Positions 9,216 through 63,619 of a stretch of DNA of 64,000 nucleotides are shown here, piece after piece. Location: the sequence record OK040170.1, one strand, 5' to 3'. Made by a program: the position numbers and the translations under genes. The notes under the pieces were generated by a model, which worked only from the letters and a program-made list of their open reading frames with translations, ran no database searches and was not told the origin of the DNA. Positions within the stretch are counted from its first letter, which is position 1; every line of letters begins with the position of its first letter.

Positions 9216-9239
9216 CCGGAGGACCTTACGGTCCTCCGG
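9216..9239. terminator. Bidirectional terminator
   Basis: CCGGAGGACC-TTAC-GGTCCTCCGG between convergent genes. Confidence 0.8.
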
Positions 9240-9246
9240 TTTATGA

Positions 9247-9855: not shown

Positions 9856-9858
9856 TTA

Positions 9859-34120: not shown

Positions 34121-34149
34121 ATTAATTACTCTTAGGAGTGTCTCTGACA

Positions 34150-37100: not shown

Positions 37101-37509
37101 TCGTTCTTACGCCAGTCAGCCTGTTAGTTCCCGTGCAACTATCGATATCCCGCCGTTTGAAGTATTGGCGGCAATCCAACGTGACCCATCCGTCGCCATC
37201 GCTGAGGATTCTAACCCAATCCACAACCTTAAAGAGAAAGAGAACGTAACTTACTCTGGTACAGGCGGTCGGTCTAAACGTGCAATGGTTCGCCGTACTC
37301 GTGCGTTCCATAAATCGGATATCGGTATTCGTGCAGAAGCATCGGTGGATAACGGTGACGTAGGGATTAACACATTCCTTACCGCTAACCCTAACCTGAC
37401 CTCGCTTCGTGGTACAGCAGTTCCAACTGTTGATCCGGATCCGAAGAACGGTGTCGGTAACCTTCTGAGTACGTCAGCGCTCGTAGCTCCATTTGCGACA
37501 TACGACGAT
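34150..37509 (+). CDS. rpoB: Virion RNA polymerase beta subunit N/middle part, exon 1 (phiKZ gp178-like)
   Basis: ATG 34150 with AGGAG RBS; RpoB motifs NPIHNL..K..VT..GTGG, ...APFATYDD; the ORF runs into an in-frame TAG 15 nt inside the intron. Confidence 0.9.
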
Positions 37510-37933
37510 CAATATTTACTTTAGTTCACTAACTGAAGTACGGGTCGCTTCTGGGAGTAACCCCAGTCGAATAACTCTCTTAATTGCGGGAACCCACTAA
37601 AGCCACACTGCTACAACGGAGTTCGAAAGGACAAACGTGAATGCTCTAAAAAGTGTGTGGATGTACAATGGGGAATCGAGTTCGGTAACCAATCCGATCT
37701 TTCGCAGCGAAGCCTCTACCGTATCGTAGATACCACGGGGAACGTTCAACGACTATCGAAACGACATGACACGGATGTGTAGCATGTAACGGAGTAGAGT
37801 AGACCACTCGAGCGAGGGTCGAAATAGAGAGCGCCCTAAAGAATAGGGCGATGATATAGTCTCCTGAACTAGCTAACAGCTAGGGTAGCGGGTAATGCCG
37901 CAGGTGAATTTAGCGAATTCATTGACGACTAGA
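37510..37933 (+). mobile_element. Self-splicing group I intron (IA-like), 424 nt, no internal ORF
   Basis: P element AATTGCGGGAA 37582-37592; Q-like CGCAGC 37703-37708; R GTTCAACGACTAT 37744-37756; S ATGATATAGTCT 37851-37862. P3 CTCTCT/AGAGAG; P7 GACTAT/ATAGTC; P8 CGCCCT/AGGGCG; P2 and P9 hairpins. P1 exon CGAT paired to IGS GTCG with a U-G wobble. Removal restores YDD|PKR (RpoB HDD-ANR). Confidence 0.9.
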
Positions 37934-47789: not shown

Positions 47790-50006
47790 ATGGCTAACTC
47801 AAGCTTAGGCAATCGTATTTCGGAACTCCCACGTTCTACGAGATCGATCAACGATGCCGACTTAACCCCGATTTCTCAAATCAAAACCAACAATCCGGAA
47901 ACCGTAGCGGCAACCGTCGGTGACATTCGTGCCACCTTGGATTTTGATAATGCTTATAATTCCATCCCAGAAGGCCTGGCAGGGACTTTCCCTGAAGAGC
48001 GCTTCTATGTTTACACCGATAACTCAAAACGCTTTGTAAACGGCTACATCAACAAAAACGGCGTATCTGAAGTTATCCTCGACAAATCAGGTCAACCTCG
48101 TCGCTGGGCTACCCCGCTCTATATGCTCGCTATCGGTGAGCAATCTATCACAGTAGCTTCTGTTGACCAGATGCGTATCATGGCTCCGCAAGTTGACGGC
48201 CAAGTCGTACGTATGCGTAACTTCCGCCAGGGTAACGTTCAGTACAAAAACGGTGGCGATTGGGTTTACGACGCTAACGACAAAACCACCAAAGACGACG
48301 GCGTGATGTGTGTTGTTACCAACACCGGCGAACGTTTCAAGCGTGACATCTCTAGCGGCTCTATCGAAACCGATTGGTTCTTCGACCCGGTAATGGATAT
48401 CGCAGACTATAGTCTGACGCTGAACAAAGCCGCTGAGTGGGTGGAAGTAAAAGGTACTGAGTGGTGGCAGACCTGGTTACCAAGCACCCCAGCTTACATT
48501 ACCATGGTAGGTCCTGGCGGTGTTCGTACCTGTAAGAAACCAGTATGGCTCCGTATGTGGGCCGTGAGCTGGGACTTCCGTGGTACTTTGCTGGACTTCA
48601 CTGGAGGTGCTGTCGGTCAGACCAACGTCTCCGTAGTCTACGGTCACCGTAACTCTACACTGAGCAACCTGCGCATGTTATCCAGCGTAGCGTTGAAGCA
48701 GAAGGGTATCAACGTCTCAACGACTTCCGGTAACATTCACGGTCTGTCCGCAGCGTTCCTGAACTTCAACAACATCTCAATCAACCGTCACGACATTGCT
48801 TGGGATCTGGGCGATAACTGCTACCTGAACAACTGGTTCCAGTGCACCACTCAAGGCTGCCGTCTGCCAATCAACGCACCTAAGTCTGCAAACGCCGGGG
48901 AAACTCTGGTATGGACTAAGTGTATCTTCGGTGACGGCATTGGCCCTTACCTGAACACAGGTATGTCGATGACCTTCCACGGTTGCTCGTTCGACTACTC
49001 CGGTTACAAAACCGAAGCTGACCAATTGGCTAATGCTGAGAAAGAAGGTTTATTCAATATCGATAACTGTACGGTTCTGATGTATGGTTGCGGTAACGAA
49101 TATGGTAACTTGAACAGCCGGTGGTCAGGTCCAGTATGGAGAGGTACGGGTATTATCAAGCTCTACGAATGTCAGTGGATCTTGACTACTTCAAGTACAG
49201 TCGAACCTAACGAAACGACACCGCACTTGGTACACAACTACTACTTCGAAGATACTTCTGCCGACCTGTCGTCCAAGGTCTATCTGGAAGGGTTCTACGT
49301 CCCTAACCCTGACTTGAACCGATTCTCCGGTAGTTGGACTAATGGCTGCTTCATCAAAGTCACTGAGTCTTATCCAGGTCGTTATAAGGACATGTGGCGT
49401 AACTACACGCTAGGTAAGGGAGCTAACATGTTAATCTCCCCTAACCCTAACAACGTTGGTTACTTGACCATCAACCGTCCTCGTTGCTCTGGCGGTACTG
49501 TGGTTTCTCCTACTGAGACTTCTCTGTTCAAAGTGACTACTAACGGCAACAAGTTAGTGATCACTAGTTCAGATACTACCAAGGCACCCAAGACCTTCAG
49601 TTTCTACACTAAGGGTAAAGCGGGTAACTGGTACGGTTCTCAGTTGACCGTTAACGGTAACCGTGACATGACCGATGTACGTATTGCAACTAACTGCTTC
49701 GGTGTAGTGGGTTACGTAGCTCAGGACAACAGCATCACCTCGTTGGGCGAGCAACGTCAAACTTGGAACGCCGGTCTTCAGGGTATTAAGACCACGCCTC
49801 AGACTACTCCAGGTATGCGCATGACGCAGTTGGGTACGAGTGAATACCTGCCACTTTGTCCTCCGGGTACCGAGTGGGTTCGTGTCTCTATCGAGATGAC
49901 TAACTTTGGCATTGCAGCCGGTGAAGCTCCAGCGGTATTGGAAATCACCGACTTCTACGCTTGTGAAGTTGGCGTCTGTCGTGACACCAACCACCGCGTT
50001 TGGTAA
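47790..50006 (+). CDS. Tailspike / capsule depolymerase 1 (738 aa)
   Basis: Shared RISELP anchor, neck (SVDQMR...DDGV...FKR), parallel beta-helix repeats, lectin-like C-terminus. Confidence 0.85.
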   Translation: MANSSLGNRISELPRSTRSINDADLTPISQIKTNNPETVAATVGDIRATLDFDNAYNSIPEGLAGTFPEERFYVYTDNSKRFVNGYINKNGVSEVILDKSGQPRRWATPLYMLAIGEQSITVASVDQMRIMAPQVDGQVVRMRNFRQGNVQYKNGGDWVYDANDKTTKDDGVMCVVTNTGERFKRDISSGSIETDWFFDPVMDIADYSLTLNKAAEWVEVKGTEWWQTWLPSTPAYITMVGPGGVRTCKKPVWLRMWAVSWDFRGTLLDFTGGAVGQTNVSVVYGHRNSTLSNLRMLSSVALKQKGINVSTTSGNIHGLSAAFLNFNNISINRHDIAWDLGDNCYLNNWFQCTTQGCRLPINAPKSANAGETLVWTKCIFGDGIGPYLNTGMSMTFHGCSFDYSGYKTEADQLANAEKEGLFNIDNCTVLMYGCGNEYGNLNSRWSGPVWRGTGIIKLYECQWILTTSSTVEPNETTPHLVHNYYFEDTSADLSSKVYLEGFYVPNPDLNRFSGSWTNGCFIKVTESYPGRYKDMWRNYTLGKGANMLISPNPNNVGYLTINRPRCSGGTVVSPTETSLFKVTTNGNKLVITSSDTTKAPKTFSFYTKGKAGNWYGSQLTVNGNRDMTDVRIATNCFGVVGYVAQDNSITSLGEQRQTWNAGLQGIKTTPQTTPGMRMTQLGTSEYLPLCPPGTEWVRVSIEMTNFGIAAGEAPAVLEITDFYACEVGVCRDTNHRVW

Positions 50007-50011
50007 AACAG

Positions 50012-50053
50012 AGGAGAGGGCTTCGGCCCTCTCCTTATATCGTTTCCTATGAA
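50012..50053 (+). promoter_or_regulatory. Terminator plus late promoter unit
   Basis: AGGAGAGGGC-TTCG-GCCCTCTCCT (50012-50035), then TTCCTATGAA (50044-50053). Confidence 0.7.
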
Positions 50054-50082
50054 ATCTAAACAGACTTTGTAAGGTAAATAAA

Positions 50083-52347
50083 ATGGTTGATCAGGTTAAA
50101 ATATCTGAGCTCGGTAAGGCTACTGTTGTACGGGAAAGTGATGTTATTCCTTTAAACAACACCACGACCAGAGGTCTTCCTATTACTAAAGGAGCCAGTG
50201 TTGACAACTTAAGAAGTTGTTTCAATTTTGAACACGCCTTCTCAAGTGTAGACGAAGGTATTTCCAATACCAATTCTGATGAAGTATTCTACGTTTTTAC
50301 TGACTCCAATAAAGTGATGGTCGGTAAATATATTAATAGTAATGGCCATGCCTCTATAGTAGTCGGCGAAGACGGTAAACAGGTAACTTACCCAACTGTT
50401 AAAGCTAGCGCTAGTATGTCTAGTATTTTTGAAGCTGACGGGTATAAGGATTTAGGTAAGGTTCAGTACATTGCCGATTTAGTAAATATTGAGCCAAGTA
50501 ACGATAAACAAAGTATCATTGTAGAACGTTCAGTAGAAGGCGGCCCTGCTCTCAATTTAATCTACACTTACGATAGTAGATTCCAACAAGGGAATATAGA
50601 CGGAGTTCTGCGAGTAACCTCCGCCAAAGGTAAAGTTTGGGTTTTAGATATCTCAAACGGTTTGAATGTCTTTGCGTTCGGATTTGTACCAGAGGCGAAC
50701 AACTTGGCGCAAACGATCAATAAAGGCGTTAAATCCCTCGTAGACATGGCTATAACTAATAAAGCGACTTACGGCACATGCTCTCATTTACTGGTACCTG
50801 GCGTCAATCCTGCAACCGGCTTAGCCAAGTACGTAATGACCGAGACAATTAAACTCCCTAGCTTCATTGGCTTGAGGTTTACTTGTTCGACTCTCCTCGA
50901 TTATTCAGGTAATGACATTGACGGGATTACGGTCAATAATACCATGTTCCCTAATGCTACAGATGCCAACCTTATTAGTTGGTACAATACTCAATCGAAT
51001 GGCGTCACTGTCATTGAATGTCCAGGTAAGGTCATCGTAAAAGGAGTTGGGTCGGATACCTCTACCGCACACGGAGTTTGGGTGGGTAATACTGTAAAAG
51101 GGTTTATCAACTGCCGTGACGTATTAGTTTCAGATGTAACTATTATCGGATTCAAATACGGCCTACGTCATGATGGGGTGGATAGTTACCTGAACTCTTT
51201 CCGTAGGGTAGTCTGTGCCAGGAATTTTAACTCGGTTTACTTTAAAGGTACCGGAACTGGTAACGCCGGAGAAAAAATTTCATTCTTCGAATGTCTATTC
51301 AGCGACACCTCTTCATCCAACATTGTCCTTGATATTTTTGCGTTTGAGTTAACCTTCGATAATTGTAGTTTTGACTATCAGAAAGGCGATGTATTCTTCT
51401 TAGGTAAGAGTACAACTCACGGATGGGTTAAAATTACCAATTCCCATATCGAAGGATTCGATGGTTATCTTATCAACCAACCGGATAAGTGGACGGGTAC
51501 CGGACAGAAGTTCTACTTCGTCAATACCCAGGTTTGGGGCGTATACGCCACAATTCCATATAGTCCACCACGTAAACTCTTCGACGCAGAATTGGGAGCA
51601 TTCTACGTTAGCTTCCAGGATTCCCCGGTAAACTTCCGGAATAAGGGTACTAAGGACTACGGGACATTAACTGGATTTGGTAAAACGAATGACAGTAGTT
51701 CAGTTACTGGCCAGTTCACTGTGAATAGCTCCAGAACCGATCCATGTTACTTGATAAGCTATAACCTTGCTGATAACCGTAGGTATCGTTTTACCGGTAC
51801 AGAAGGCGTAGTATTACCTAACCCGGAACCTAGCACTGGGATTTCCTACATTACCCGCAACGGTGCAGTAGAAGTCACCTATGGCAAAATTGGGACAGAC
51901 GGGCTTCAGAGCGTTGTTATCAACTCTAGTGATGTCGGTGCTGAGGTAGACTTTGTCTTCCCTGAAAGGGTCCCGGTCGGTCCACGAGATACCTTTAATA
52001 GCATGATATCAGTTAAGCAAGGTAGTGCGACTGGTGATGTGAAAGTGTTCGGTATTGCGCGCTGCTTTACAGACCCAACTATGACAGGTAAGAAGAACGC
52101 TGCTGACGATAACGTAGTGATCACCACTAACTATCCAGTACTAGGTACAACCGCCGATCGTAACTTCCTCCTTTCAGAAGCACTAGGTGAAGTAGGTACT
52201 AACGTGACCCGTAACGATTTCGTCGCAACCCCTCCATTAACATCAACGTTATGGAACGCCGTTAAGAGCGCCAGTATTGGTCTTCGTATTACTGGCTTCA
52301 CTGGTTCAATCGAGATCAAACTACCAGTGTACTGGAAGGTAAAATAA
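50083..52347 (+). CDS. Tailspike / capsule depolymerase 2 (754 aa)
   Basis: KISEL anchor, neck, beta-helix with NAGEKISFFECLFSD (shared with spike 1 NAGETLVWTKCIFGD). Confidence 0.85.
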   Translation: MVDQVKISELGKATVVRESDVIPLNNTTTRGLPITKGASVDNLRSCFNFEHAFSSVDEGISNTNSDEVFYVFTDSNKVMVGKYINSNGHASIVVGEDGKQVTYPTVKASASMSSIFEADGYKDLGKVQYIADLVNIEPSNDKQSIIVERSVEGGPALNLIYTYDSRFQQGNIDGVLRVTSAKGKVWVLDISNGLNVFAFGFVPEANNLAQTINKGVKSLVDMAITNKATYGTCSHLLVPGVNPATGLAKYVMTETIKLPSFIGLRFTCSTLLDYSGNDIDGITVNNTMFPNATDANLISWYNTQSNGVTVIECPGKVIVKGVGSDTSTAHGVWVGNTVKGFINCRDVLVSDVTIIGFKYGLRHDGVDSYLNSFRRVVCARNFNSVYFKGTGTGNAGEKISFFECLFSDTSSSNIVLDIFAFELTFDNCSFDYQKGDVFFLGKSTTHGWVKITNSHIEGFDGYLINQPDKWTGTGQKFYFVNTQVWGVYATIPYSPPRKLFDAELGAFYVSFQDSPVNFRNKGTKDYGTLTGFGKTNDSSSVTGQFTVNSSRTDPCYLISYNLADNRRYRFTGTEGVVLPNPEPSTGISYITRNGAVEVTYGKIGTDGLQSVVINSSDVGAEVDFVFPERVPVGPRDTFNSMISVKQGSATGDVKVFGIARCFTDPTMTGKKNAADDNVVITTNYPVLGTTADRNFLLSEALGEVGTNVTRNDFVATPPLTSTLWNAVKSASIGLRITGFTGSIEIKLPVYWKVK

Positions 52348-52388
52348 TTTTATCAGGGGGCTTCGGCCCCAATAACGAGGCTGAGAGA

Positions 52389-54521
52389 ATGCCAGTATCA
52401 CCGACGAAATATACTAAGATCTCCGACTTACCTAAAAAGGAAGTTATGGAGAACGATCAGTTTATCATTAATACCAACGACACTAAGCTGGATCAAACGA
52501 GCGTAGCTTCTCTCTACGATATTCGTGAGGGCGTCTACTTCAGTAACGCAGCTAACACCATCGCCGAAGGTCTGGCCTCCGTGGACGATGACGAGATGTT
52601 CTTTGTCTACGACACTGCAGCTAAGTTCTCTGTCCTTCAGTACATGAAGGTTCGTAACCAGGCATCACCTGTCATTGGTTCCGATGGCAAACAACGCCGT
52701 TTCCCTACTTACCTTTCCATGTTGAATGTAACTGCTATCTCGGAAACGTCCGGTTACGACATCATCGGTAAGGTTGACAATTTCGCCGCTCTACGTTCTA
52801 TCAAACCTACCTACACGGGTCAGCGCGTTATCCTGGCTGGGTATTTCTCTGGTAGCTCTTTGGGATCCGGGGAATTTGTGGGGTACGCAGGGACAGCTAA
52901 CGATGATGGCGGTACTACTGCCTCAGGCGATGGCTTTTATTGGAAGCGGAACAAGACTGCCTTTACGCTCGAAGATTTCGGCGGTGGCCAGGTAGACGAT
53001 ACTGAAGCAATGCGTGCATCTCAGAAAGCACAAGTAGGCCCTATTACCTTATCTCCAGGTAAAACCTATTATTACTCATCTCCGGTAAAACATTATTCTA
53101 AAGCCGGTTGGATTGGTAATGGTGCTTCTATCGTATTCAGAGGGACAGGTAACCGAATTCCGTTTATCTCTTCTCCGACTACAGCTGCTGGAGTTGATAA
53201 CGATCGCGCAAACGGAAGCACTGCTGTAGTCGGAGCTATTTTTAAAGATCTGACTATTGACGTCAACTATGTCGATACTACGGGCGCATTAGGCTTTGAG
53301 TTTGGCGAGAACACGTTGGACAACTGGACGAATTGCGTCTTTACTAACGTGACATTCAAGAACGGTAAGTTCGATAACTTGGGGCTGCAGAATAACTCCA
53401 CCGATAACCAGTTTATCCGCTGTACTTTCATTAACGCAGGTGAAGACTCGGTTACTGTACGCGGCGGTTGTCTCCGTAATGAGTTTGTTGAATGTGATGT
53501 TGTCAATAGCGCACAGGTAGCTCACCGAGACGGAACCTTCTACGGAGACGGTATCGTCAACAAAGGTCGTGATACCTTGATCAAAAGCTGTCGCTTCATC
53601 AATATCGGTAATGGTAAGAAAGGCGCAGGTATTGCAAATAACGCTGAAGATACCAAGAACGCCGACGAAGCTAGTAACGGTACTTACCTCAACAACTATT
53701 TCATTAACTGTTATGGCGGTTTTGGTTTCGGTACGGTTAACCCAGACTTCATCGCAGCAGGTGATTTGATTAAAGGTATCAAGGCTATCGGAAACGTATT
53801 TGTAAATACGCTTCGCACCGTGATAGGTATTCGTGATCTTTACCAACCGGTTCTGTTGGATAACGTTATCCTTACCCAGACCACCGGTAACGTAACCACG
53901 ATTGAGATTACCAACTGCACCAACTTCCAAATGACCGGTCGTGTTACAGATGCCGCTGGCTCCGCTATTACGATTACGTCTTCCTCGGGTAAAGTTGATT
54001 TGGTGGCGGATAATGTCTCCACGACCAAGACACTCAACGGGGTGGTTATTACCGACAGTAATCGGATTACGGGCAGTATCCGTTTGATCAATGCTCAACG
54101 CCGCGGCTGTACTTTCTCTAACTGTAACAACATGGACTTAGACCTCTACGTTGAGTCGCCTGCACAGGACGCGCTGGAAGCAGTTGGCTGTCGTTACTCT
54201 AACTTAGATGTTAAGTTGGTGAACGTCCCTGAACACGGTATGACATTGAACGGCGTTGTTGAAAGTAATATCAAGTTCAACATCAATGATGCGGGAGTTA
54301 AAACTCCATCTGCATTTTATCCGATCCGGTTACTGGGTGTACGTAACAGTATCCTCAGCGGAGTATCGTCTTCGGCTAATGCGAATAAACCACTTTACGA
54401 TATTACATCCGATGCTAATAACGTAAACGTATTAATCGCCAATAGTCGTCTTGGAGCGGGTACTACGGGTAAAGTACAGGTTGGTCAAGGGTCTACTATT
54501 ACCCAGAACAATATCATCTAG
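52389..54521 (+). CDS. Tailspike / capsule depolymerase 3 (710 aa), pectate-lyase-like
   Basis: KISDLP anchor, neck (FAALR...GSGEF...DDGG...WKR), EDFGGGQVDDT, Asn ladders, GEDS and GDGI beta-helix motifs. Confidence 0.88.
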   Translation: MPVSPTKYTKISDLPKKEVMENDQFIINTNDTKLDQTSVASLYDIREGVYFSNAANTIAEGLASVDDDEMFFVYDTAAKFSVLQYMKVRNQASPVIGSDGKQRRFPTYLSMLNVTAISETSGYDIIGKVDNFAALRSIKPTYTGQRVILAGYFSGSSLGSGEFVGYAGTANDDGGTTASGDGFYWKRNKTAFTLEDFGGGQVDDTEAMRASQKAQVGPITLSPGKTYYYSSPVKHYSKAGWIGNGASIVFRGTGNRIPFISSPTTAAGVDNDRANGSTAVVGAIFKDLTIDVNYVDTTGALGFEFGENTLDNWTNCVFTNVTFKNGKFDNLGLQNNSTDNQFIRCTFINAGEDSVTVRGGCLRNEFVECDVVNSAQVAHRDGTFYGDGIVNKGRDTLIKSCRFINIGNGKKGAGIANNAEDTKNADEASNGTYLNNYFINCYGGFGFGTVNPDFIAAGDLIKGIKAIGNVFVNTLRTVIGIRDLYQPVLLDNVILTQTTGNVTTIEITNCTNFQMTGRVTDAAGSAITITSSSGKVDLVADNVSTTKTLNGVVITDSNRITGSIRLINAQRRGCTFSNCNNMDLDLYVESPAQDALEAVGCRYSNLDVKLVNVPEHGMTLNGVVESNIKFNINDAGVKTPSAFYPIRLLGVRNSILSGVSSSANANKPLYDITSDANNVNVLIANSRLGAGTTGKVQVGQGSTITQNNII

Positions 54522-54527
54522 TCATAC

Positions 54528-54564
54528 GGCCAGGGGTTTCCCTGGCCTATGTTTGTTCATATGA
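54528..54564 (+). promoter_or_regulatory. Terminator plus late promoter unit
   Basis: GGCCAGGG-GTTT-CCCTGGCC (54528-54547), then GTTCATATGA (54555-54564). Confidence 0.65.
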
Positions 54565-54596
54565 CAGTTTCCTAAAACAATCAGGATAAGTATACA

Positions 54597-56609
54597 ATGG
54601 CCGATAAATCACCAGTTAAAATATCTCAGTTACCCGAGCCTACCGGGACTGGGATTAACGATAGCGACATCTTCGCGGCATCCCGTATAACGGGAGCAGA
54701 TAAGTTAGAGACTCAACGTATCACTGTCAGCGAATTGCGTAAGCTGATGGATTACGGTAATGCATTCTCTGACTTGAACGCAGCTATTGCAGCAACCGTT
54801 AAAGATCAACAGTTTTACGTATTCGTTGATGACTCGAAAGAGTTCGTTTACCGTTACGTGAACATGGGCGGAATTGCTTCCCCAGTTCTCGATATGTCAG
54901 GTAATCCGCTCAGGGAACCAACCAAAGAACTTGTTAAACATCTTGAACAAATACGTTCTAGTGTCGGTTTCGGATTGATTGGCCAGATTAAATCATTCGA
55001 TGAGCTACGGGCAACAGAGCCTACCTTCCCTGGTCAGCGTGTATTACTCAGCGGATATCGAGATGGCGCTAACTACGGCGGAGGGGAATTCTTCCACGAC
55101 GTAGCTGACAAAAATACAGCCGACAATTCAGGTACAGTGGCAGTTACCCCAGGAGGGGCGCGCTGGAAACGGGTTATCGTTGACACATCTACTAACCATG
55201 CCGAGTGGTGGGGTGTACATTACTCTCAGGCAGATAACGCAGTTGCGTTAAAGAAGGCAGCAGACGCATCACGCAAAAAGATACTTATGCTTCCACAAGG
55301 TAGTAACGCTAACCCGATCGTAATTCGTAGCCCTATCGTATTCCAGACTAACTGCGGGATTAAACTGCGCGGCTGCGGTGTCAAAGACTCCACGACCATC
55401 TCTGTTCAAATCGGCCCTGGTTATGAAACCTACGGAGCCCTTCACTTCCCTGGCCGTAACCCTACCACCAATGCGATGGAAGCCGGTTTCGCTGGGATTG
55501 AAATTAGTAACGTTCAGTTGTTGGGTAACTTGAGTACCTGTCGTGGCATTTATCTTCAGTACCAATATCAGTCTCTGTTCAGTTACGTTAACGTAGAGCG
55601 CTTCAACGGTGCCGGTCTTTATCTTGATAAGAGCCAAGATAGCGATTTCAACTTCTTTAACGTTTGGGATTGTGGTCGTACTAACGGGGATCGTACATCT
55701 AACGTTGATACGTTCGACATGACGAAAACAGCGGAGTCTCCGATCGTAGCAGTTAGTACCATTACTAACGACTTCTGTAACTATCTCCGTTTCAACGACT
55801 GTCAGTTCGAAGATAACCACGTATGCCCGGTTATGGACCTTAACTGGGGTATTGAGAACTACATCAACAACTGTCACGTTGAGTTTAACGCTAACTGGAA
55901 CATCACGGGAGCACCCACCCCATACTTCCTTAAGATGCAACAGGGCGTAACTAAAATCAACGGAGGCGGTATTGCCGAGTATCAGGGCATTCAGCATAAT
56001 TACGGTGAACTCTATCTCCGTGATGTTCGATGTTCCCCAGGTATCGTTTACACCATGCTTAACGATGTAACGAGCCGTGCAGAATTCCACGGGATCAGTT
56101 TCTATTCAATCCCTGGGTTGGCACGTAAACGATTCACTAAGTTTGAGTATTGTAACTTCTCCCAACCAGTTACATTAGCGTACCCTAACTCGGATATCTG
56201 GTTTGATAAATGTACGTTCGTGGGAGATTTCACTACTACCCATGCTGGTGCAGATCTCCGTATGACAATCAGAGGTTGTTACTTCAATGCTAACGTAACT
56301 ATCGCAGACGATACGACTAACGTATTCATGGACGGGTGTTATATCGCAGGTGATGCCAACTATGGTTCAGGCGGCGGGATGTGGGGTAACAACAAAGTAC
56401 TCGGTACGTTTACTCAAACGAGTAATGGTGTTCGCTGGGTAACTCCTACGTTCAAGCAAGTGGTAGGTACAAGTGCCCCAACGACCGGATCCTTCAGAGT
56501 CGGTGATTTGTGCTGGAATACTGCACCTACTGCCGGAGGCGTCACTCACTGGCGTTGTGTCACGGCAGGTAGTCCTGGTACCTGGCGCGCAGTCTCAATT
56601 GTTTCCTAA
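54597..56609 (+). CDS. Tailspike / capsule depolymerase 4 (670 aa)
   Basis: KISQLP anchor, neck, beta-helix, C-terminal APTTG..RVGD..WN..P.AGG...W.C...G.PGTW module. Confidence 0.88.
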   Translation: MADKSPVKISQLPEPTGTGINDSDIFAASRITGADKLETQRITVSELRKLMDYGNAFSDLNAAIAATVKDQQFYVFVDDSKEFVYRYVNMGGIASPVLDMSGNPLREPTKELVKHLEQIRSSVGFGLIGQIKSFDELRATEPTFPGQRVLLSGYRDGANYGGGEFFHDVADKNTADNSGTVAVTPGGARWKRVIVDTSTNHAEWWGVHYSQADNAVALKKAADASRKKILMLPQGSNANPIVIRSPIVFQTNCGIKLRGCGVKDSTTISVQIGPGYETYGALHFPGRNPTTNAMEAGFAGIEISNVQLLGNLSTCRGIYLQYQYQSLFSYVNVERFNGAGLYLDKSQDSDFNFFNVWDCGRTNGDRTSNVDTFDMTKTAESPIVAVSTITNDFCNYLRFNDCQFEDNHVCPVMDLNWGIENYINNCHVEFNANWNITGAPTPYFLKMQQGVTKINGGGIAEYQGIQHNYGELYLRDVRCSPGIVYTMLNDVTSRAEFHGISFYSIPGLARKRFTKFEYCNFSQPVTLAYPNSDIWFDKCTFVGDFTTTHAGADLRMTIRGCYFNANVTIADDTTNVFMDGCYIAGDANYGSGGGMWGNNKVLGTFTQTSNGVRWVTPTFKQVVGTSAPTTGSFRVGDLCWNTAPTAGGVTHWRCVTAGSPGTWRAVSIVS

Positions 56610-56613
56610 AACC

Positions 56614-56656
56614 AGAGGAGGGGAAACCCTCCTCTTTTATTTTGGGTTCCTATGAA
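56614..56656 (+). promoter_or_regulatory. Terminator plus late promoter unit
   Basis: AGAGGAGGG-GAAA-CCCTCCTCT (56614-56635) with T tract, then GTTCCTATGAA (56646-56656). Confidence 0.75.
56615..56634 (+). repeat. 20-bp direct repeat copy 1
   Basis: GAGGAGGGGAAACCCTCCTC, identical at 60546-60565. Confidence 0.85.
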
Positions 56657-56686
56657 TATTTACACAATACCATGAGGCTCACGTCC

Positions 56687-59600
56687 ATGTCAGATAACGA
56701 TTTACAATTGCGCATTACCGAGTTGCCGAAGTTAGACCACTTCGATTCCAACTCTGTTCTCCCTGCGGTAGGGCGTAGTCAAGGCACTAAGATGACAGGT
56801 AAAGTTAACTTCCGTGAAATGCGGAGTTACTTCGATTTGTCAAACGCCTACGAAACCATTAAGGACGGTGTCGATGCCACTAAGTTAGGCGATACGTTCT
56901 TCGTCTACTCTGATGGCACCAAAGTATTCGCCAACGAATACCAGAACATCGGTGGCGCTGCCACTCCAATCCAAGATCCCAAAGAAGGGGTCATCTATTA
57001 CCCAACGCGTATGGGTATTGTAGGTAGTCTGGCTGCCGGTGCTACCGTAGGTAGCTTTGATGAACTCCGTAACACTCGCCCGTTAAAAGAGGGTGTTAGC
57101 ATTTATCTCAGTAGCTATTATAAAGGCCTTAATAAAGGTGGCGGTGAGTTTATTGGCTATTACGGTAAACGCGCCGACGATGGCGGCATGGTAGCCGGTG
57201 ACGGGAATAACTACTACTGGGTACGTAACGCTAACTTCGTCACTCCGGAAATGTTTGGTGCTTACGGTACTCCAGATAAAGATGACTCAGCTGCTATAGA
57301 AGGGGCACTGAACTCAGGATTAGATGTTCAGTTCGACGGTAGCGCTACTTATATCGCAAACCGTACCCTTGTCCTGAAGTCAATCAAGTGGCAACAATTC
57401 ATTGACGGTAACGGAGCATGGATCAAGTATAGCGATAAATCCCGTGGTTTGATTAACGAGATTGACGCCAATGGTGTTACCCAGCGTTACACGAAGTTCC
57501 GTAGCTTCTTCAACTTGAATCTCCAGGGTCCTGCTACCAAGAACTCTAAGTGGAACGACGTTAACCAGTGCGATGCTCTGTGCATTAGTTACGGTGTAGT
57601 TGAGAACTGTAACTTCTACGGATGGTCTAACGCCCTGCGTGGTTTCGGTGAAGCCTACGTAAACAACTGCTTCGGTGACGACCTTCGTACAGCAATGTTC
57701 TCCTGCTACGATCCAGGGCATAACGAAATCACTAACAGTTCGGTTGGTTGGTGTTCTGGTGACGCTATCATCCTTAAAGGTGGTTCAGGTAAAGCTCACA
57801 ACGTCGATATCGTCTACGCAGGCTGTATTGACAAAAACAACGAAGACGGCGCTACGGCTCTCCCAGGTTGTATCGTGTCATGTGGCGCAGATGGTGCCGG
57901 ATCTCAAAACATCCAGATCTCCAACATCAGTTGCCAGTACTTCGGTTGTGCTGGTCTGAACATCCAGGGTGACGGCGTAACGGTTTCCGGTGACATGAAC
58001 CTGGGGTCTATCTACGAAGATAACTTCCAGTACGCTAACCAAGCAGCTGCCTTGTGGATTGGCGCTAAGAACTTCACCATCGGTAACTTGCACTTTAACA
58101 AAGTACACGTCGGTGTAGGGATCAACGGTAACTGCGCGAATGGTTCGATTGGTAAGATTCGGATCATGAGCAAAACCAACCTGGCAGGATCTACTCTGTT
58201 CTCGGCAACAGATGGCCCTAACTCCCAGATCACCAAAGTTATCGTGGATTCAATCGATTTCCTCGGCGCGTCTACGATTAACAACGACGTTTACATCAAC
58301 ACCGATGGCCTGTATCTGAAATCGTTCTATATCCAGTCCTTGAACAACCTTCAAGGCGGTTATACGGTTGCTCTGCGTAAGAACGCTCGTATCGGTAAAA
58401 TGATTCTGGCAGCAACGACTTCAGCAAGCACGAGTCCGGTAATGCTCATCGAGAGCGATTCCGTCATCGATGAACTGGAGTTCCGTCGTAACTTCGGTAC
58501 TGCATTGGTGGTTGAGAACAATGCTCGTCCAGCAATCAAACGTCTTTCCTTCCAGTACAAACAAGGCATTGCACCACCGTTCGTCATTAAAGGCGACGGC
58601 ACCATGACCTTGAACTGGGGTGACGTCGATATGTTCGGCCCGAGTGTGGCTCGTCCTCAGATCGCCGGTAAGCTCGTAATGAACTCTTACCAAGGTCCTA
58701 CGTTCCGCCCGTTTGATGCAGCCGTATATGCCGGCGTAAGTTACCCTAATCGTTCGGTGGACTTTGTCGAAGAACTTCGAATGGTAGGTCCTGCTAAAGA
58801 AGGGGATAAGATAGAACTTAAGAGCTACGTGTTAGGTAAAGGTATAGGGGGCGGTAATTTCATCGGGACGTTGATTACAACCCCTGATGATGGCGGTATG
58901 GTGATTACCGGTAACGGTTACAGCTGGCTTCGTCAAGTTCAGGACAAACGTGTTAACGTAGAGCACTTTGGGGCTATCGGCGATTATGGGAGGATAACTT
59001 TGAAGGGTACCGATAGTACGGTGGCCTTAGCTAACGCGATCGCAGCCGCTAAGCGCTTGGGGTACTCTATATTCTTCCCATGTTCAAAGATCAACGAGGG
59101 TTACTACACAACTAAAATGTTAGTAATGACCGGGATTATGAACATAGTCGGAGATAGTATTCGCATTTACGTTGCATCTGACAAGTTCGATAAAACTAGC
59201 GGTAGTTACGTGTTATGTTGGGGTAATCCAGATACCGATTATAAGGACATCAGTGGCTGGCCTAATATAGCTGATATTCACGTAGAGGACGTCTCTAAAC
59301 GCGCATCGCCAATGAGTGGTATTTTCTTTAAATTCACTGGCGGTAATGTCGGCAGGATTTCCGCCCGCGCATTCGACGGAGCAGGTTACCAATTTGGCCC
59401 AGTGTACGACTCGGTATTCGCTGGGCTGGTGACGGAACGCTGCGGTAACGAGACGACCTACTCTCACTACTGGAGAGGTAACGGAGACGAGACTAACTCA
59501 ATAACAGTTAGTAACATTCTCTGTCACGATGCGTATCATAAGGGTGTCTCGATTAACGGCTCTAAGCATAACATCGAACGCGTCCACATTGAAGCAACCG

Positions 59601-60541
59601 CTACGTTAGTAACTGATGACGGTTATACCGGAAGTACGAAGTCAGGATTAACTTACCTTAATCATCAGTTCTATTTAGTTGCAGGGACTGTAGGTGATTT
59701 AACTGTTAACGACTATCGTAGAAGTAACGGTAAAACGTACTACGGTGATAAGGATGCTCTCGACGTAGGTAGTCATACTCGACTTGTACTTGATTTATCG
59801 TCTAGTATAGCCACCTCTTCATCAAGCGCAGCTAAATCGATAACTAGTACGTTTGGCGGATCGAATATGTATGGTTACATCGGCGCACTATCTACCGACG
59901 TTTATCATGCAGAACCTAGCGCCAGGATAAACATTGGAAATATCTTGGTTAAAGACACTGCATTTATCTGGGAGTCTGCGCATAAGGTATCCTTTGGTCG
60001 TATCCGTAACCTAGGGGCCAGTTACGGTAATTTCGATTCTGTTACGTTTACCTTACCGTACGTGGCGACACCAAACTCAACTGCTACTACTAATTTCACC
60101 AATTGTACTTTCAACGGCGGAGTTAATGGGTTGTGTACCGGATACAACTATTTCAACGATTGTACCATCGCTTCAATTTCGTTAAATAGTTCAGCAACGC
60201 CAGAAAGAGCTAAGTTCAACAACTGCTTGATTACGGGAAATACACTAATCGACGGAGTAAACGCTACAATCAACTCTAAGAATTTATGGTTCTCATCATG
60301 TAGATTCTCTGGTAACGTAGCAATTAGTAATATCAAAAACGATGGGCCTCGTTTCTCTGGGCAATGCGTCTGTTACGGTACAGTAACAGGTTGGGTTACT
60401 CCAAATGGGATTCCGGTAGGTACAATGTGCGAAAGATTGGGTCCGGCAGCAGATGGAGATGGTTTAGTTTACTACTGTTCTAAACTAGATTCCACTACTT
60501 CTGTATCCACTTGGATACCTGTGGTTAAATTTACAGCATAG
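56687..60541 (+). CDS. Double-module tailspike / depolymerase 5 (1284 aa)
   Basis: Start moved to ATG 56687 (GAGG RBS; RITELP anchor). Neck + beta-helix module occurs twice (SFDELR...GGGEF...DDGG...WVR and FVEELR...GGGNF...DDGG...WLR). Confidence 0.88.
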   Translation: MSDNDLQLRITELPKLDHFDSNSVLPAVGRSQGTKMTGKVNFREMRSYFDLSNAYETIKDGVDATKLGDTFFVYSDGTKVFANEYQNIGGAATPIQDPKEGVIYYPTRMGIVGSLAAGATVGSFDELRNTRPLKEGVSIYLSSYYKGLNKGGGEFIGYYGKRADDGGMVAGDGNNYYWVRNANFVTPEMFGAYGTPDKDDSAAIEGALNSGLDVQFDGSATYIANRTLVLKSIKWQQFIDGNGAWIKYSDKSRGLINEIDANGVTQRYTKFRSFFNLNLQGPATKNSKWNDVNQCDALCISYGVVENCNFYGWSNALRGFGEAYVNNCFGDDLRTAMFSCYDPGHNEITNSSVGWCSGDAIILKGGSGKAHNVDIVYAGCIDKNNEDGATALPGCIVSCGADGAGSQNIQISNISCQYFGCAGLNIQGDGVTVSGDMNLGSIYEDNFQYANQAAALWIGAKNFTIGNLHFNKVHVGVGINGNCANGSIGKIRIMSKTNLAGSTLFSATDGPNSQITKVIVDSIDFLGASTINNDVYINTDGLYLKSFYIQSLNNLQGGYTVALRKNARIGKMILAATTSASTSPVMLIESDSVIDELEFRRNFGTALVVENNARPAIKRLSFQYKQGIAPPFVIKGDGTMTLNWGDVDMFGPSVARPQIAGKLVMNSYQGPTFRPFDAAVYAGVSYPNRSVDFVEELRMVGPAKEGDKIELKSYVLGKGIGGGNFIGTLITTPDDGGMVITGNGYSWLRQVQDKRVNVEHFGAIGDYGRITLKGTDSTVALANAIAAAKRLGYSIFFPCSKINEGYYTTKMLVMTGIMNIVGDSIRIYVASDKFDKTSGSYVLCWGNPDTDYKDISGWPNIADIHVEDVSKRASPMSGIFFKFTGGNVGRISARAFDGAGYQFGPVYDSVFAGLVTERCGNETTYSHYWRGNGDETNSITVSNILCHDAYHKGVSINGSKHNIERVHIEATATLVTDDGYTGSTKSGLTYLNHQFYLVAGTVGDLTVNDYRRSNGKTYYGDKDALDVGSHTRLVLDLSSSIATSSSSAAKSITSTFGGSNMYGYIGALSTDVYHAEPSARINIGNILVKDTAFIWESAHKVSFGRIRNLGASYGNFDSVTFTLPYVATPNSTATTNFTNCTFNGGVNGLCTGYNYFNDCTIASISLNSSATPERAKFNNCLITGNTLIDGVNATINSKNLWFSSCRFSGNVAISNIKNDGPRFSGQCVCYGTVTGWVTPNGIPVGTMCERLGPAADGDGLVYYCSKLDSTTSVSTWIPVVKFTA

Positions 60542-60545
60542 AACG

Positions 60546-60565
60546 GAGGAGGGGAAACCCTCCTC
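60546..60565 (+). repeat. 20-bp direct repeat copy 2 (terminator), followed by late promoter GTTCCTATGAA at 60573-60583
   Basis: Exact match to 56615-56634. Confidence 0.85.
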
Positions 60566-60613
60566 CTATTTTGTTCCTATGAAACATTACTCTCTTATAC
60601 TAGGTGCAAACCC

Positions 60614-63600
60614 ATGGCCGATAATTTCAGCGGTATTAAGATTAGTCAGTTAGACGATCCTAATCGTATTAACGACAACGATATCATCCCGTTCACTAAC
60701 GATGACATGGGCGATAAACAAACACGTAAAATAAAGTTAAGTGCCCTACGTGATCAGCTCAATTACGCCAACGCTTTCCTAACCGTACAGGAAGGTTTAG
60801 CCAACACTATCCCAGGACAGATCTTCCACGTATACGTCGATGACACCCAGTTAGAAGTCTACGCGTACCTTAACAACAATGGCGCAGCAGAGATCGTCCA
60901 AGATGCGCAGGGTAATCCTTTTAAAGGACAAACCGCTAAAGCGCTGGACTTCATTCGTGGTGAGTTAGGACTTACCATGATCGGTCACGTAAGTTCCTTT
61001 GCACGACTGCGTGAAATCAAACCTCCTTTCGAAGGTGCTATTGTAGAACTTCTGGGTTGGAACGAGGGCTCCACTTACGGCGGTGGTCGTTTCCAGGGTA
61101 AGTTATCAACTGGTGCCGACGACAACGGTATTGTTGCGGCAGGCGACGGTTTCCACTGGCGTCGCATTAATGTCGACGAAGGCATTAACCCAGAGTGGTT
61201 CGGTTACGTGAATGGTTCAGGTAATGACGTATCCACTACGTTGAAACAAGTCATTGCTCAGGCGGTTAACTTGAAACGTCCTGTTGTATTCCGTGATGGG
61301 GCTCAAATGAGTCTAGCGGTAGCAGGGATTGAAATTCCAGTAGGTGTTGATCTTACTGTGGCTAACGGTGGGAGAGCTTACTTTGAAATCACTCACGAAA
61401 TCGAAACAACCGGACAGTTCCTTGTCAAAAGTAAAAACCGAATCTCCGGACTTGTCTTCAACTACCCGAAACAAACAAAAGACATCAATGCTAAGCCGAT
61501 TGTGCGTTACGGACCTATTTTTGTCGGTGCTGGATTTTATTCTTCTTTCACGGGAATAAATGTAGGTAACGCTTACTACGGATTTAAGATCGGTGGTAAC
61601 GACGAAGGTTCCGCATCGTACATCACGATGAAAGATATTAACGGCGCCCCTATCTACCGCGGAATTTCACTTGACCGTGTTCTGGACATCCCTCGTATTT
61701 CCGATATCCATTGGAACTACAACATGTACCTGAACTCCGATCAGGACTACGCACAATCTCTGAAACAGTGGATTCATGAGAATGGTGAGGCGTTCCACTT
61801 TGGTCGTGTTGACTTTGCTGAAGTACAACGTATCTTTGCATTCGGGTACAGTAAGGGTATCTTCCTGAGAGGTGAGCGTTATGCAGGTAGCGCCGATTCC
61901 ATTCGCTTCACAGGTTGCGACATGGACATTTGCGTTAACCCTATCTACGCTCAGAACTTTAGTGGCCAGTTAGTTATTCGTAACGGTAAGTTCTTCGGTA
62001 CAACGTACGGTAACCTTGTCATCGATAAGTTGAATCTGTTCAACATGGACGGATATAACCCTAACGTTGTTCTTAACGGTATCTTGATGATTGCATCGGG
62101 TTCACGTTTTAACTTCATGATGGCAACTAACTTCAATGGCCGGGCTATCCATTTCGCTGACTCTTACGATAACGTAATGGGCGACATTCGAGTAATGTGG
62201 TCTGGGAACCAAAGCGCCTTTGCATTAGAAGTTGGTGCATGGAAAGCTGACAGTACGTCTAGTCGCGATGAATCTAACGCCAATACATTCTTGGCAGTAA
62301 TGGCGCATAACTGCCGTGAGAAGTCGTGGTTGATTGCTGGTAGTAAAACCAACGTTGTCCGTATTCACGACGAGGCAATCTTGTCCACTACGGCAACTCC
62401 GAGTAATCCTATCGGGATTGAGTCACGAAATGGTTACGGGTATACCTCGTGCTACTTCTCTTCAATCGGCGGTCACTTAGGCGATGTCAGTTTCGCTACT
62501 TTCGACAAGGCGTCTACCGTTAAACCAGTATTGACGATTGGTTCTTCGGTCACTTGTAGTTGCGACAATATCGCTTCTGGTCGTGATGGTGCGAACGTTG
62601 CGGTTATCTCAGGTGATCCAGGTCCAAGTGGCGCTGGTACTATCGCATCTGTTACCTGTAATGAATTCCGTACACTGGCCAACGCCAGGACTGCGACTAC
62701 TGCGCTGGTTTGTAACAACGCAATACTCGTGGATCCTAGCTCCCCTATTTTGTCAGGGACGATCAACGGAGATTTAACGTTGATGTCTAGTGCTACTTGG
62801 ATAGGTCTGAGTAATCTTCGCGTTGGCGGCGTGACCAATGTTGGGACACCTGCGATGTTTAGTAACTGTACGTTCAACGGTTTACTGAATATCACGTTCG
62901 ATAACTTCGGCACCATCCTTAACCGGATGCGCCATACGTTCGAACACTGTAAAATAAACGACGCCGTTAAGTCAGATACGTCGAAAGTCATTTTCCGAGA
63001 TTGCTCACTTATTTCGACTAAAGACTTTACTATTACGGGTGCGGGTGAAGGAGTACGCTTTGAGTCTAGTCGCATTAACATGAACGTCATCATGGACAAT
63101 AAAGCTAGTCTTGAATTCATCGACTCTGAGGCGAATGGGACTAACGTCGCTACCAGTTCTACCGGTACAATTTTAGTTTCTAACTCTAGCTGGTCGACCG
63201 GTGCAATTAATGCTACCGCAGCTACGCAAGTTATTATCCGTGAAGGTTCGGTAATGCAAGCCTTGAACGGTGTAGTTAATCTTAGAGTTATCGACTCAAC
63301 GGTTGCTTCTCCGTTTACGTTGGGTAATAACGCTCGTGTTTGGTTGTCTAATGCAAACATGAATGATGTAACGATTTCTGGCACAGGTATTAACTTGGAT
63401 GCCGATAAAACGTTCTTCAACCGTTTCGTATTTGATAGCGGCAAAACCAATACCGGTGCGTGGCGTATCTCTCAAGATTGCGTTGCGTGGACAACTGCTA
63501 ACTGGGTTGTTCCTACCGTTGTATCGGGCTACGGTGTACGTACTTACGATATATCTACTGGTACAATTTATAAGGTTGTCTCTGGAGCATGGAAAGTAGT

Positions 63601-63619
63601 AACTGAAAGTACAGCGTAA
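60614..63619 (+). CDS. Tailspike / depolymerase 6 (1001 aa), apparently chimeric
   Basis: KISQL anchor, neck, then long beta-helix; the second half resembles module 2 of spike 5. Confidence 0.85.
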   Translation: MADNFSGIKISQLDDPNRINDNDIIPFTNDDMGDKQTRKIKLSALRDQLNYANAFLTVQEGLANTIPGQIFHVYVDDTQLEVYAYLNNNGAAEIVQDAQGNPFKGQTAKALDFIRGELGLTMIGHVSSFARLREIKPPFEGAIVELLGWNEGSTYGGGRFQGKLSTGADDNGIVAAGDGFHWRRINVDEGINPEWFGYVNGSGNDVSTTLKQVIAQAVNLKRPVVFRDGAQMSLAVAGIEIPVGVDLTVANGGRAYFEITHEIETTGQFLVKSKNRISGLVFNYPKQTKDINAKPIVRYGPIFVGAGFYSSFTGINVGNAYYGFKIGGNDEGSASYITMKDINGAPIYRGISLDRVLDIPRISDIHWNYNMYLNSDQDYAQSLKQWIHENGEAFHFGRVDFAEVQRIFAFGYSKGIFLRGERYAGSADSIRFTGCDMDICVNPIYAQNFSGQLVIRNGKFFGTTYGNLVIDKLNLFNMDGYNPNVVLNGILMIASGSRFNFMMATNFNGRAIHFADSYDNVMGDIRVMWSGNQSAFALEVGAWKADSTSSRDESNANTFLAVMAHNCREKSWLIAGSKTNVVRIHDEAILSTTATPSNPIGIESRNGYGYTSCYFSSIGGHLGDVSFATFDKASTVKPVLTIGSSVTCSCDNIASGRDGANVAVISGDPGPSGAGTIASVTCNEFRTLANARTATTALVCNNAILVDPSSPILSGTINGDLTLMSSATWIGLSNLRVGGVTNVGTPAMFSNCTFNGLLNITFDNFGTILNRMRHTFEHCKINDAVKSDTSKVIFRDCSLISTKDFTITGAGEGVRFESSRINMNVIMDNKASLEFIDSEANGTNVATSSTGTILVSNSSWSTGAINATAATQVIIREGSVMQALNGVVNLRVIDSTVASPFTLGNNARVWLSNANMNDVTISGTGINLDADKTFFNRFVFDSGKTNTGAWRISQDCVAWTTANWVVPTVVSGYGVRTYDISTGTIYKVVSGAWKVVTESTA

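What the first reader, a model, noticed from the sequence alone, without database searches (positions are those of the whole stretch)
56687..60541. Two complete tailspikes fused head-to-tail in one 1284-aa polypeptide
After the anchor comes neck 1 (from about 57040) and beta-helix 1. At about 58755 a second full neck (FVEELR...GGGNF...PDDGG...WLR...VEHFGAIGD) begins, followed by an unrelated beta-helix 2. Codon style shifts at the junction (ATA/TTA/AGG appear), indicating in-frame capture of a foreign spike. The product would be a tandem bifunctional depolymerase, two specificities on one docking site, which is unusual because a C-terminal cap or chaperone normally ends a spike.
Basis: partly seen in the sequence, partly recalled or inferred. 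Interest (0 to 1): 0.7.

Follow-up and report, generated by a model that had tools for sequence, protein, structure and literature searches.

The report
Two-body tailspike with swappable tip
One gene of a giant Serratia phage encodes a tail spike made of two complete sugar-cutting spike bodies in series. Related phages keep the inner body and exchange the outer one, an arrangement I did not find described in the literature I could search.

Summary
Window 56687-60541 (+) is one intact 1284-aa ORF of Serratia jumbo phage BUCT660 (100% nt match). It reads anchor (aa 1-118), neck 1 (119-200), beta-helix body 1 (201-688), neck 2 (689-770), beta-helix body 2 (771-1284).

The two necks are homologous (49% identity, E 2e-11). 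Both halves give confident tailspike-like beta-helix models (pLDDT about 90). Each half matches the full body of free-standing spikes of other phages, and body 1 ends where those spikes end.

All seven sequenced Moabiteviruses and several metagenomic relatives carry a two-body spike at this position. The proximal body is conserved and the distal body is exchanged exactly at the junction. Four Moabiteviruses carry a different distal body that ends in a Peptidase_S74 chaperone.

BUCT660 is a recombinant: 2050HW-like proximally, Kodama-like distally. Both halves are under strong purifying selection (dN/dS about 0.04). A second lineage, related to Klebsiella phage phiKp24, shows the same pattern with K1-lyase-like or K47-depolymerase-like distal bodies.

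Enzymatic activity, trimer assembly and presence of the full-length protein in virions were not tested. I rate it a new variant of a known kind, of moderate interest.

The parts
56614..56638 (+). Terminator-like hairpin ending the upstream spike gene. Its 20-nt core is identical to the hairpin after this gene.
   Evidence: only two copies in the window, 0 expected by chance
56647..56656 (+). Conserved intergenic motif TTCCTATGAA about 30 nt before the start codon. It is a candidate phage late-promoter element.
   Evidence: four exact copies, all intergenic in the spike array, none inside the gene
56687..60541 (+). Whole gene: the 1284-aa two-body tailspike, fifth gene of a six-gene spike array
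56687..57040 (+). N-terminal virion anchor (aa 1-118), shared at 23-30% identity with the five neighbouring spikes
   Evidence: phrog_27731
57041..57286 (+). Neck 1 (aa 119-200), equivalent to the neck helix plus connection domain of Depo32
   Evidence: PMC10581125
57287..58750 (+). Proximal beta-helix body 1 (aa 201-688), conserved at 95-100% nt in all Moabiteviruses
58751..58996 (+). Neck 2 (aa 689-770), an internal second copy of the neck domain
58997..60541 (+). Distal beta-helix body 2 with a small C-terminal beta domain (aa 771-1284) and the stop codon
58736..60541 (+). Exchangeable cassette. Identity to the Moabite/2050HW allele collapses from about gene nt 2050 and resumes just after the stop codon.
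60545..60567 (+). Terminator-like hairpin after the gene, with the same core as the upstream one
47790..56609 (+). Four upstream single-body spike genes of the array (738, 754, 710 and 670 aa). All four have the same kind of anchor. A neck was detected in all but the second (50083-52347), weakly in the first.
60614..63619 (+). Downstream spike gene (1001 aa), itself a hybrid of two spikes that are separate in 2050HW

Best explanation
The gene encodes one long tailspike subunit, presumably trimeric like its relatives. A single N-terminal anchor carries two complete depolymerase-type spike bodies in series. Each body starts with its own neck (trimerising connection) domain followed by a right-handed beta-helix.

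The proximal body is a conserved fixture of this phage lineage. The distal body is an exchangeable cassette, swapped between phages by recombination at the end of body 1 and start of neck 2.

BUCT660 itself is a recombinant. Its proximal part comes from a 2050HW-like phage and its distal part from a Kodama-like phage.

Shown: the architecture, the folds, the homology of each half to free-standing spikes, the exchange boundary, purifying selection on both halves, and a single transcription and translation unit.

Inferred: the full-length protein is built into the virion, both bodies bind or cut surface polysaccharide, and one docking site therefore presents two glycan specificities. The outer body would meet the cell envelope first.
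For: - Intact single ORF with no terminator, promoter motif or start signal at the junction. Matching terminator hairpins and the intergenic motif lie only at the two ends.
- Duplicated neck: E 2e-11. Both copies hit WceF 6TGF and Depo32 7VYV/7LZJ.
- AlphaFold2 models: aa 119-775 has pLDDT 89.9; aa 640-1284 has pLDDT 89.4. Foldseek places both among solved tailspike depolymerases such as CBA120 TSP2/TSP4, Depo32, DpK2, K2-2 TSP and WceF, with E about 1e-7.
- Body 1 aligns to free-standing spikes of Tsm2, phiMAM1, HS106 and BUCTxx100 to within 6-11 aa of their C-termini.
- Body 2 aligns from neck to end with free-standing spikes that carry three different anchors (P0001, P0002, P0004).
- Exchange: identity to 2050HW/Moabite is 95-100% up to gene nt about 2050, then 13-57% until the stop codon.
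- BUCT660 follows the 2050HW haplotype at 82 consecutive informative sites, then the Kodama haplotype.
- There are three independent pairs with the same proximal body and different distal bodies.
- dN/dS is 0.035 (proximal) and 0.043 (distal) between BUCT660 and Kodama. Between 2050HW and Moabite, dS is 0.136 proximally but 0.002 distally, so the distal cassette has spread on its own.
- Both halves keep the polar residues that are invariant among their free-standing relatives.
Against: - There are no protein-level data, so the full-length product in virions is not shown.
- Only monomer halves were modelled. The trimer and the relative geometry of the two bodies are untested.
- No catalytic residues could be assigned, and no Pfam glycosidase or lyase family is matched.
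- The strict conservation of body 1 would also fit a purely structural role.
- The distal half is richer in rare codons, which could lower its yield.
Confidence: 0.75

Rival explanations
1. Only the distal body is a working enzyme. The proximal beta-helix has become a rigid stalk or docking platform that holds the exchangeable tip further out. The spike would then have one specificity, not two.
For: Body 1 is nearly invariant across the genus while the tip varies. In phiKp24-like and Ackermannviridae phages some spikes serve mainly as scaffolds for others (PMC9700779 and 10.1101/2024.03.21.586117, as listed). No catalytic family is matched.
Against: Body 1 keeps the Asp, Arg and Asn residues that are invariant in its free-standing relatives, which are the working spikes of five unrelated Serratia phages. 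A plain stalk would not need a full-size beta-helix kept at dN/dS 0.035, although a scaffold could be equally constrained.
Confidence: 0.17
2. The polypeptide does not stay whole. It is cut at the junction, or the distal half is also made from an internal start, giving two separate spikes.
For: A conserved Met lies a few residues into neck 2 in both alleles. Spikes of this kind are sometimes processed, and the Moabite allele carries a self-cleaving Peptidase_S74 chaperone at its C-terminus.
Against: No promoter motif, terminator or clear ribosome-binding site lies at the junction. A free distal half would have no anchor. No protease domain is matched near the junction. The junction is a direct continuation of fewer than about 10 residues.
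Confidence: 0.05
3. A recent one-off fusion peculiar to this phage, or an assembly artefact that joined two genes.
For: The codon shift at the junction.
Against: The same continuous ORF is present in three independently sequenced phages with this allele, in four with the other allele, and in metagenome contigs from unrelated samples. The relatives span 37-98% identity.
Confidence: 0.02

Closest known systems
Moabite gp221 / 2050HW gp120 (1347 aa, 'tail protein'), the allele at the same locus in sister Moabiteviruses
   Same: Identical anchor, neck 1 and body 1 (about 98% aa), with a second neck at the same position.
   Different: The distal beta-helix is unrelated beyond the neck and ends in a Peptidase_S74 intramolecular chaperone, which BUCT660's distal body lacks. 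In the full-text library I could search I found no paper describing a two-body spike; papers on these particular phages were not examined for it.
Hyperbranched multi-spike tail fibre array of Klebsiella jumbo phage phiKp24 (Maaswegvirus; PMC9700779). The Alcyoneusvirus (RaK2, phiK64-1) and Ackermannviridae (CBA120) branched spike complexes are similar.
   Same: A long array of spike genes with related N-terminal anchor and neck domains beside the same virion protein (DUF7941). Several specificities are carried by one virion.
   Different: In the phiKp24 stretch examined and in the solved spikes retrieved here, each specificity is a separate polypeptide with a single body. Here two bodies are joined in one chain. 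phiKp24 has a single-body 751-aa spike where its metagenomic relative P0040 has a two-body one.
Depo32 / DpK2 (Klebsiella phage GH-K3 gp32, K2 depolymerase; PDB 7VYV, 7VZ3, 7LZJ) and Pantoea stewartii WceF (6TGF)
   Same: A neck helix plus connection domain is followed by a right-handed beta-helix. These are the best sequence hits for both necks and among the best fold hits for both bodies.
   Different: They have one neck and one helix per chain. Identity to either body is only 13-18% in the fold alignments.
Modular anchor/body exchange in Klebsiella phage receptor-binding proteins (PMC8262889)
   Same: Specificity modules are exchanged by recombination at a conserved boundary, and the same body occurs behind different anchors.
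   Different: Here the part that plays the role of the anchor for the exchanged module is itself an entire spike (anchor plus body 1).
Metagenomic two-body spikes P0038 (1254 aa) and P0040 (1300 aa) from phiKp24-like phages
   Same: They share a proximal body (77% identity) but carry different complete distal bodies that begin at about aa 684-717. The distal bodies match solved free-standing enzymes lacking their anchors: K1 lyase 7W1C residues 92-671 and 7VUL residues 77-661.
   Different: There is no second copy of the neck domain; the distal bodies start with their own entry domains. Their proximal body resembles BUCT660's body 2, not its body 1.

Membership tests
Phage tailspike depolymerases (trimeric right-handed beta-helix spikes) | N-terminal domain that attaches the spike to the virion | tested here: met
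   aa 1-118 match phrog_27731 and the N-termini of the five neighbouring spikes. There is one copy only.
Phage tailspike depolymerases (trimeric right-handed beta-helix spikes) | Neck / connection domain leading into the helix | tested here: met
   Present twice, at aa 119-200 and 689-770.
Phage tailspike depolymerases (trimeric right-handed beta-helix spikes) | Right-handed parallel beta-helix body | tested here: met
   Both halves qualify: models with pLDDT about 90, and Foldseek hits to solved tailspikes at E about 1e-7 with probability 1.00.
Phage tailspike depolymerases (trimeric right-handed beta-helix spikes) | Homotrimer | not testable with these tools
   Only single-chain predictions were available.
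Phage tailspike depolymerases (trimeric right-handed beta-helix spikes) | Glycan-cleaving active site (acidic residues in a groove) | tested here: inconclusive
   Family-invariant residues are kept: R334 and D402 in body 1; D908, D934, N937, H967 and E969 in body 2. None could be assigned to a catalytic site, and there is no Pfam glycosidase or lyase match.
Spikes and fibres ending in an endosialidase-type intramolecular chaperone (Pfam Peptidase_S74) | C-terminal Peptidase_S74 domain | tested here: not met
   No hit in the BUCT660 protein at E up to 1. The Moabite/2050HW allele has it at aa 1237-1296, E 3.9e-12.
Branched multi-spike complexes (phiKp24, RaK2, CBA120 type) | Several spike genes in an array with related N-terminal docking domains | tested here: met
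   Six consecutive spike genes at 47790-63619 share the anchor, and most share the neck.
Branched multi-spike complexes (phiKp24, RaK2, CBA120 type) | Each specificity module is a separate polypeptide docked non-covalently | tested here: not met
   The two bodies studied here are one reading frame, with no internal start, promoter or terminator.
Pfam Beta_helix / Pect-lyase_RHGA_epim (PF13229 / PF12708) | Profile match above the gathering score | tested here: not met
   No family at E up to 0.1-1 for the whole protein or either half. Relatives P0023 and P0043 match PF12708 at the start of the helix.

The most novel reading that the evidence does not exclude
Stacking complete depolymerase bodies end to end on one chain may be a general, so far undescribed way for jumbo phages with spike arrays to carry an extra glycan specificity without an extra docking site. 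On this reading the C-terminus of a proximal body acts as a standard socket onto which anchor-less spike bodies from unrelated phages are recombined. Both bodies would be active and would work on two different polysaccharide layers or serotypes.
Probability: 0.35. Interest if true: 0.7.

Novelty: new variant of a known kind. Interest (0 to 1): 0.55.

Why it matters
Tailspikes decide which bacterial surface sugars a phage can recognise. The textbook spike has one anchor, one beta-helix body and one specificity, and phages with many specificities are described as carrying many separate spikes.

Here a second complete body is joined in series, and the arrangement has been kept over deep divergence. 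The outer body is replaced as a unit in at least three independent pairs of relatives. This shows that a whole spike can serve as the carrier for another. It also shows that the exchange boundary can lie after a body as well as after the anchor.

This bears on how spike genes are annotated, since long 'tail fiber' ORFs may hide two enzymes. It also bears on how specificities are counted from genomes, and on how receptor-binding diversity evolves in jumbo phages.

Tried and rejected
- Pfam scans of the whole protein and of each half gave nothing.
- The word-indexed protein search with body 1 alone found nothing. Its relatives came only from tblastn against phage records and from the exhaustive HMMER search.
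- One call failed on a frame error and one on a size limit. Both were corrected and resent.
- Literature searches for two-domain, tandem or bifunctional tailspikes found no description of this architecture (passages read). The nearest phrases referred to two separate proteins (KP32), to two weak domain hits in one ordinary spike (Dep022), or to a duplicated central domain (DepoCatalog class 4B).
- The BUCT660 genome announcement does not discuss the gene.
- A sharp GC3 step exactly at the junction was not found. The rare codons start there, but the GC3 drop is gradual and strongest after codon about 950.
- A second anchor before body 2 was looked for and is absent.
- An assembly artefact was rejected because the junction recurs in independent genomes.
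Full report
**Identity of the window.** The 3855 bases of the finding match Serratia phage BUCT660 (OK040170.1, 272.7 kb, genus Moabitevirus) at 100%. GenBank annotates them as one CDS, 'putative tail fiber protein'. Split RNA-polymerase beta-subunit genes further upstream show this is a phiKZ-like jumbo phage. The gene is the fifth of six consecutive spike genes at 47790-63619. All six share an N-terminal anchor (phrog_27731), and most share a neck domain (phrog_4250).

**The observation.** The frame 56687-60541 is open for 1284 codons.
- Neck 1 (aa 119-200) and neck 2 (aa 689-770) align at 49% identity, E 2e-11.
- Each neck hits the same stretch of two solved proteins, WceF (6TGF) and the K2 depolymerase Depo32/DpK2 (7VYV, 7VZ3, 7LZJ).
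- In Depo32 that stretch is the 'neck helix and connection domain', which forms a trimer ahead of the beta-helix (PMC10581125).
- A neck HMM built from the window's own spikes finds two copies in this protein and one in each of spikes 3, 4 and 6 of the array.
- Apart from the necks, the two halves share no detectable sequence similarity. There is no second anchor.

**Both halves fold as spikes.** I built alignments from the exhaustive HMMER search and predicted two overlapping pieces.
- aa 119-775: mean pLDDT 89.9, pTM 0.78. Neck 2 shows the same order of secondary-structure elements as neck 1.
- aa 640-1284: mean pLDDT 89.4, pTM 0.83. Only the first 48 residues are disordered; they are the cut end of body 1.
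- It places the second with WceF, Depo32, K2-2 TSP and CBA120 TSP4. All hits have E about 1e-7 and probability 1.00.

**Each half equals the body of a free-standing spike.**
- Body 1 (aa about 177-688) aligns at 26-34% identity with spikes of Serratia phages Tsm2, phiMAM1, 2050H1, 3M and Kevin, of Klebsiella phage HS106 and of Stenotrophomonas phage BUCTxx100.
- In the four of these I inspected, the alignment ends 6-11 residues before the stop codon of the free-standing spike. So body 1 is complete, and neck 2 begins where such spikes end.
- Body 2, from the start of neck 2 to five residues from the C-terminus, is 45% identical to aa 121-709 of P0001. P0001 is the 713-aa spike of a 42-kb phage contig with a P22-type portal.
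- Further relatives of body 2 carry a T7-type or a TSP1/Gp66-type N-terminal domain instead.

**One transcription and translation unit.** Terminator-like hairpins with an identical 20-nt core flank the gene. They are the only two copies in the window. A conserved motif, TTCCTATGAA, lies about 30 nt upstream of this gene and of three other genes of the array, and never inside the gene. Nothing of either kind lies at the junction.

**Codon usage.**
- GC3 is 0.538 in the first half and 0.424 in the second.
- ATA, TTA, AGG, AGA and CTA together number 6 of 688 codons against 36 of 596 (p = 1.2e-7).
- The rare codons begin with neck 2, but the GC3 fall is strongest after codon about 950.
- The gene of the closest free-standing relative, P0001, has the same AT-rich style (GC3 0.370).
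- Spike 2 of the array is equally deviant, so such composition is common among exchanged spike genes here.

**The architecture is old and the distal body is exchanged.**
- All seven sequenced Moabiteviruses match gene nt 1-2051 at 95-99%. Beyond that point only Kodama and Yaphecito continue.
- 2050HW, Moabite, Haymo and ParM-25 have a 1347-aa ORF whose remainder differs. It has a diverged neck 2, another beta-helix and a C-terminal Peptidase_S74 chaperone.
- In a four-way DNA alignment, identity between the two allele types drops from over 95% to 13-57% at about gene nt 2050 (window about 58736). It returns just after the stop codon.
- BUCT660 follows the 2050HW haplotype at 82 consecutive informative sites (gene nt 100-1548). 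It is mixed up to nt 1959 and follows Kodama from nt 1980 onward. It is therefore a recombinant of two circulating genotypes.
- Between 2050HW and Moabite, synonymous divergence is 0.136 in the proximal part but 0.002 in the distal part. The distal cassette has thus moved on its own.

**More distant relatives show the same pattern.** The search of 1.84 billion representatives gave only 282 hits.
- Among the 155 sequences fetched, the proteins with two necks are this one, Kodama's, 2050HW's, P0006, P0009 and P0010. The second neck is always at about aa 690-700.
- P0009 and P0010 lie in syntenic arrays of seven to nine spike genes on metagenome contigs.
- P0006 and P0009 are 93% identical proximally and 27% distally.
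- P0006 is closer to BUCT660 in the distal body (78%) than in the proximal one (60%).

**A second lineage.** P0038 and P0040 share a proximal anchor, neck and body (77% identity over aa 4-680) but have different distal bodies.
- P0038 aa 684-1253 matches the solved K1 lyase (7W1C residues 92-671, E 1.5e-89).
- P0040 aa 717-1300 matches 7VUL (residues 77-661, E 1.7e-182). By tblastn this part is also about 49% identical to spike genes of Klebsiella podoviruses such as IME205 and SH-KP152226; that these are K47-type depolymerases is partly my own knowledge.
- P0040 lies in a phiKp24-like spike array. phiKp24 itself has a 751-aa single-body spike in that array, more similar to P0038 (46%) than to P0040 (27%).
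- No cultured-phage record covers 80% or more of either protein.
- These two have no repeated neck, so serial joining does not depend on that domain.

**Selection.** Between BUCT660 and Kodama, dN/dS is 0.035 for the proximal half (dS 0.25) and 0.043 for the distal half (dS 0.17). Both halves keep the residues that are invariant among their relatives, including R334 and D402 in body 1 and D908, D934, N937, H967 and E969 in body 2. This fits two functional bodies but does not prove catalysis.

**How it most likely works.** This paragraph is inference. Three chains, held on the baseplate complex by one anchor, would form body 1. They would pass within about ten residues into a second trimeric neck and then form body 2.
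- By analogy with the 17.5-nm Depo32 trimer, the whole spike could be roughly twice the usual length.
- The outer, exchangeable body would meet the outermost polysaccharide first.
- The inner body is conserved, and its relatives serve as spikes in five other Serratia phages. It would act on a glycan common to the hosts of the genus.
- Whether the two act one after the other on two layers, or alternatively on different strains, cannot be told from sequence.

**Rivals.**
- Body 1 may be only a stalk.
- The chain may be cut, or restarted, at the junction.
- A one-off fusion or assembly artefact is contradicted by the recurrence of the junction in independent genomes.

**Comparison with what is known.** Single-body tailspikes, branched arrays of separate spikes, and anchor/body module exchange are all well described (PMC9700779, PMC10253068, PMC8262889, PMC11652154, PMC13385381). 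My full-text searches found no description of a spike with two complete bodies in series. The library lacks many subscription papers, so this is absence of evidence only. The sequences themselves are public and are annotated merely as tail or tail-fiber proteins.

**Verdict.** The feature is a new variant of a known kind, of moderate interest (0.55).

Noticed in passing
window 60614-63619: The next spike gene (1001 aa) is a hybrid. Its aa 1-462 are 98.5% identical to 2050HW gp121 (731 aa). The rest (from window about 61983, 99% nt) matches a spike that lies about 5.4 kb further downstream in 2050HW. BUCT660 lacks the DNA in between, so a deletion has joined two paralogous spikes in frame. In 2050HW that downstream spike is annotated as two ORFs, so it appears broken once.
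   Followed up: partly
window 56615-56634 and 60546-60565: An identical 20-nt hairpin core (terminator-like) flanks the two-body gene on both sides. These are the only two copies in 64 kb. They might serve as homology for whole-gene exchange; this was not tested.
   Followed up: partly
window 50044, 56647, 60574, 63658 (+): The exact motif TTCCTATGAA lies about 30-40 nt upstream of four genes of the spike array, with a variant before a fifth. The count (10 with up to one mismatch) exceeds every shuffle. It is a candidate late-promoter element of this phiKZ-like phage.
   Followed up: partly
L001/L002 (2050HW and Moabite, locus 6001-10044): Synonymous divergence between these two phages is 0.136 in the proximal half of the gene but 0.002 in the distal half. 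This points to a recent independent spread of the distal cassette.
   Followed up: yes
P0038 (L013) and P0040 (L014 10001-13903): Two-body spikes of a phiKp24-like lineage share a proximal body. Their distal bodies match the solved K1 lyase (7W1C) and the solved tail fibre protein 7VUL, each without its anchor.
   Followed up: partly
L016 3001-7044 (Pectobacterium phage vB_ParM-25): The intact 1347-aa two-body ORF is present but not annotated in the GenBank record.
   Followed up: yes
window 50083-52347: Spike 2 of the array is AT-rich at third positions over its whole length, anchor included (GC3 0.335 in the first 200 codons). It lacks a detectable neck. It may be a whole-gene import.
   Followed up: no
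window 34138-37524 and 37895-39085: Two adjacent genes together cover an RNA polymerase beta-subunit profile (phrog_3148 positions 2-1051 and 1050-1422). This is the split multisubunit polymerase typical of phiKZ-like jumbo phages.
   Followed up: no
window 25797-32438 (-): A 2213-aa ORF on the minus strand, not examined.
   Followed up: no
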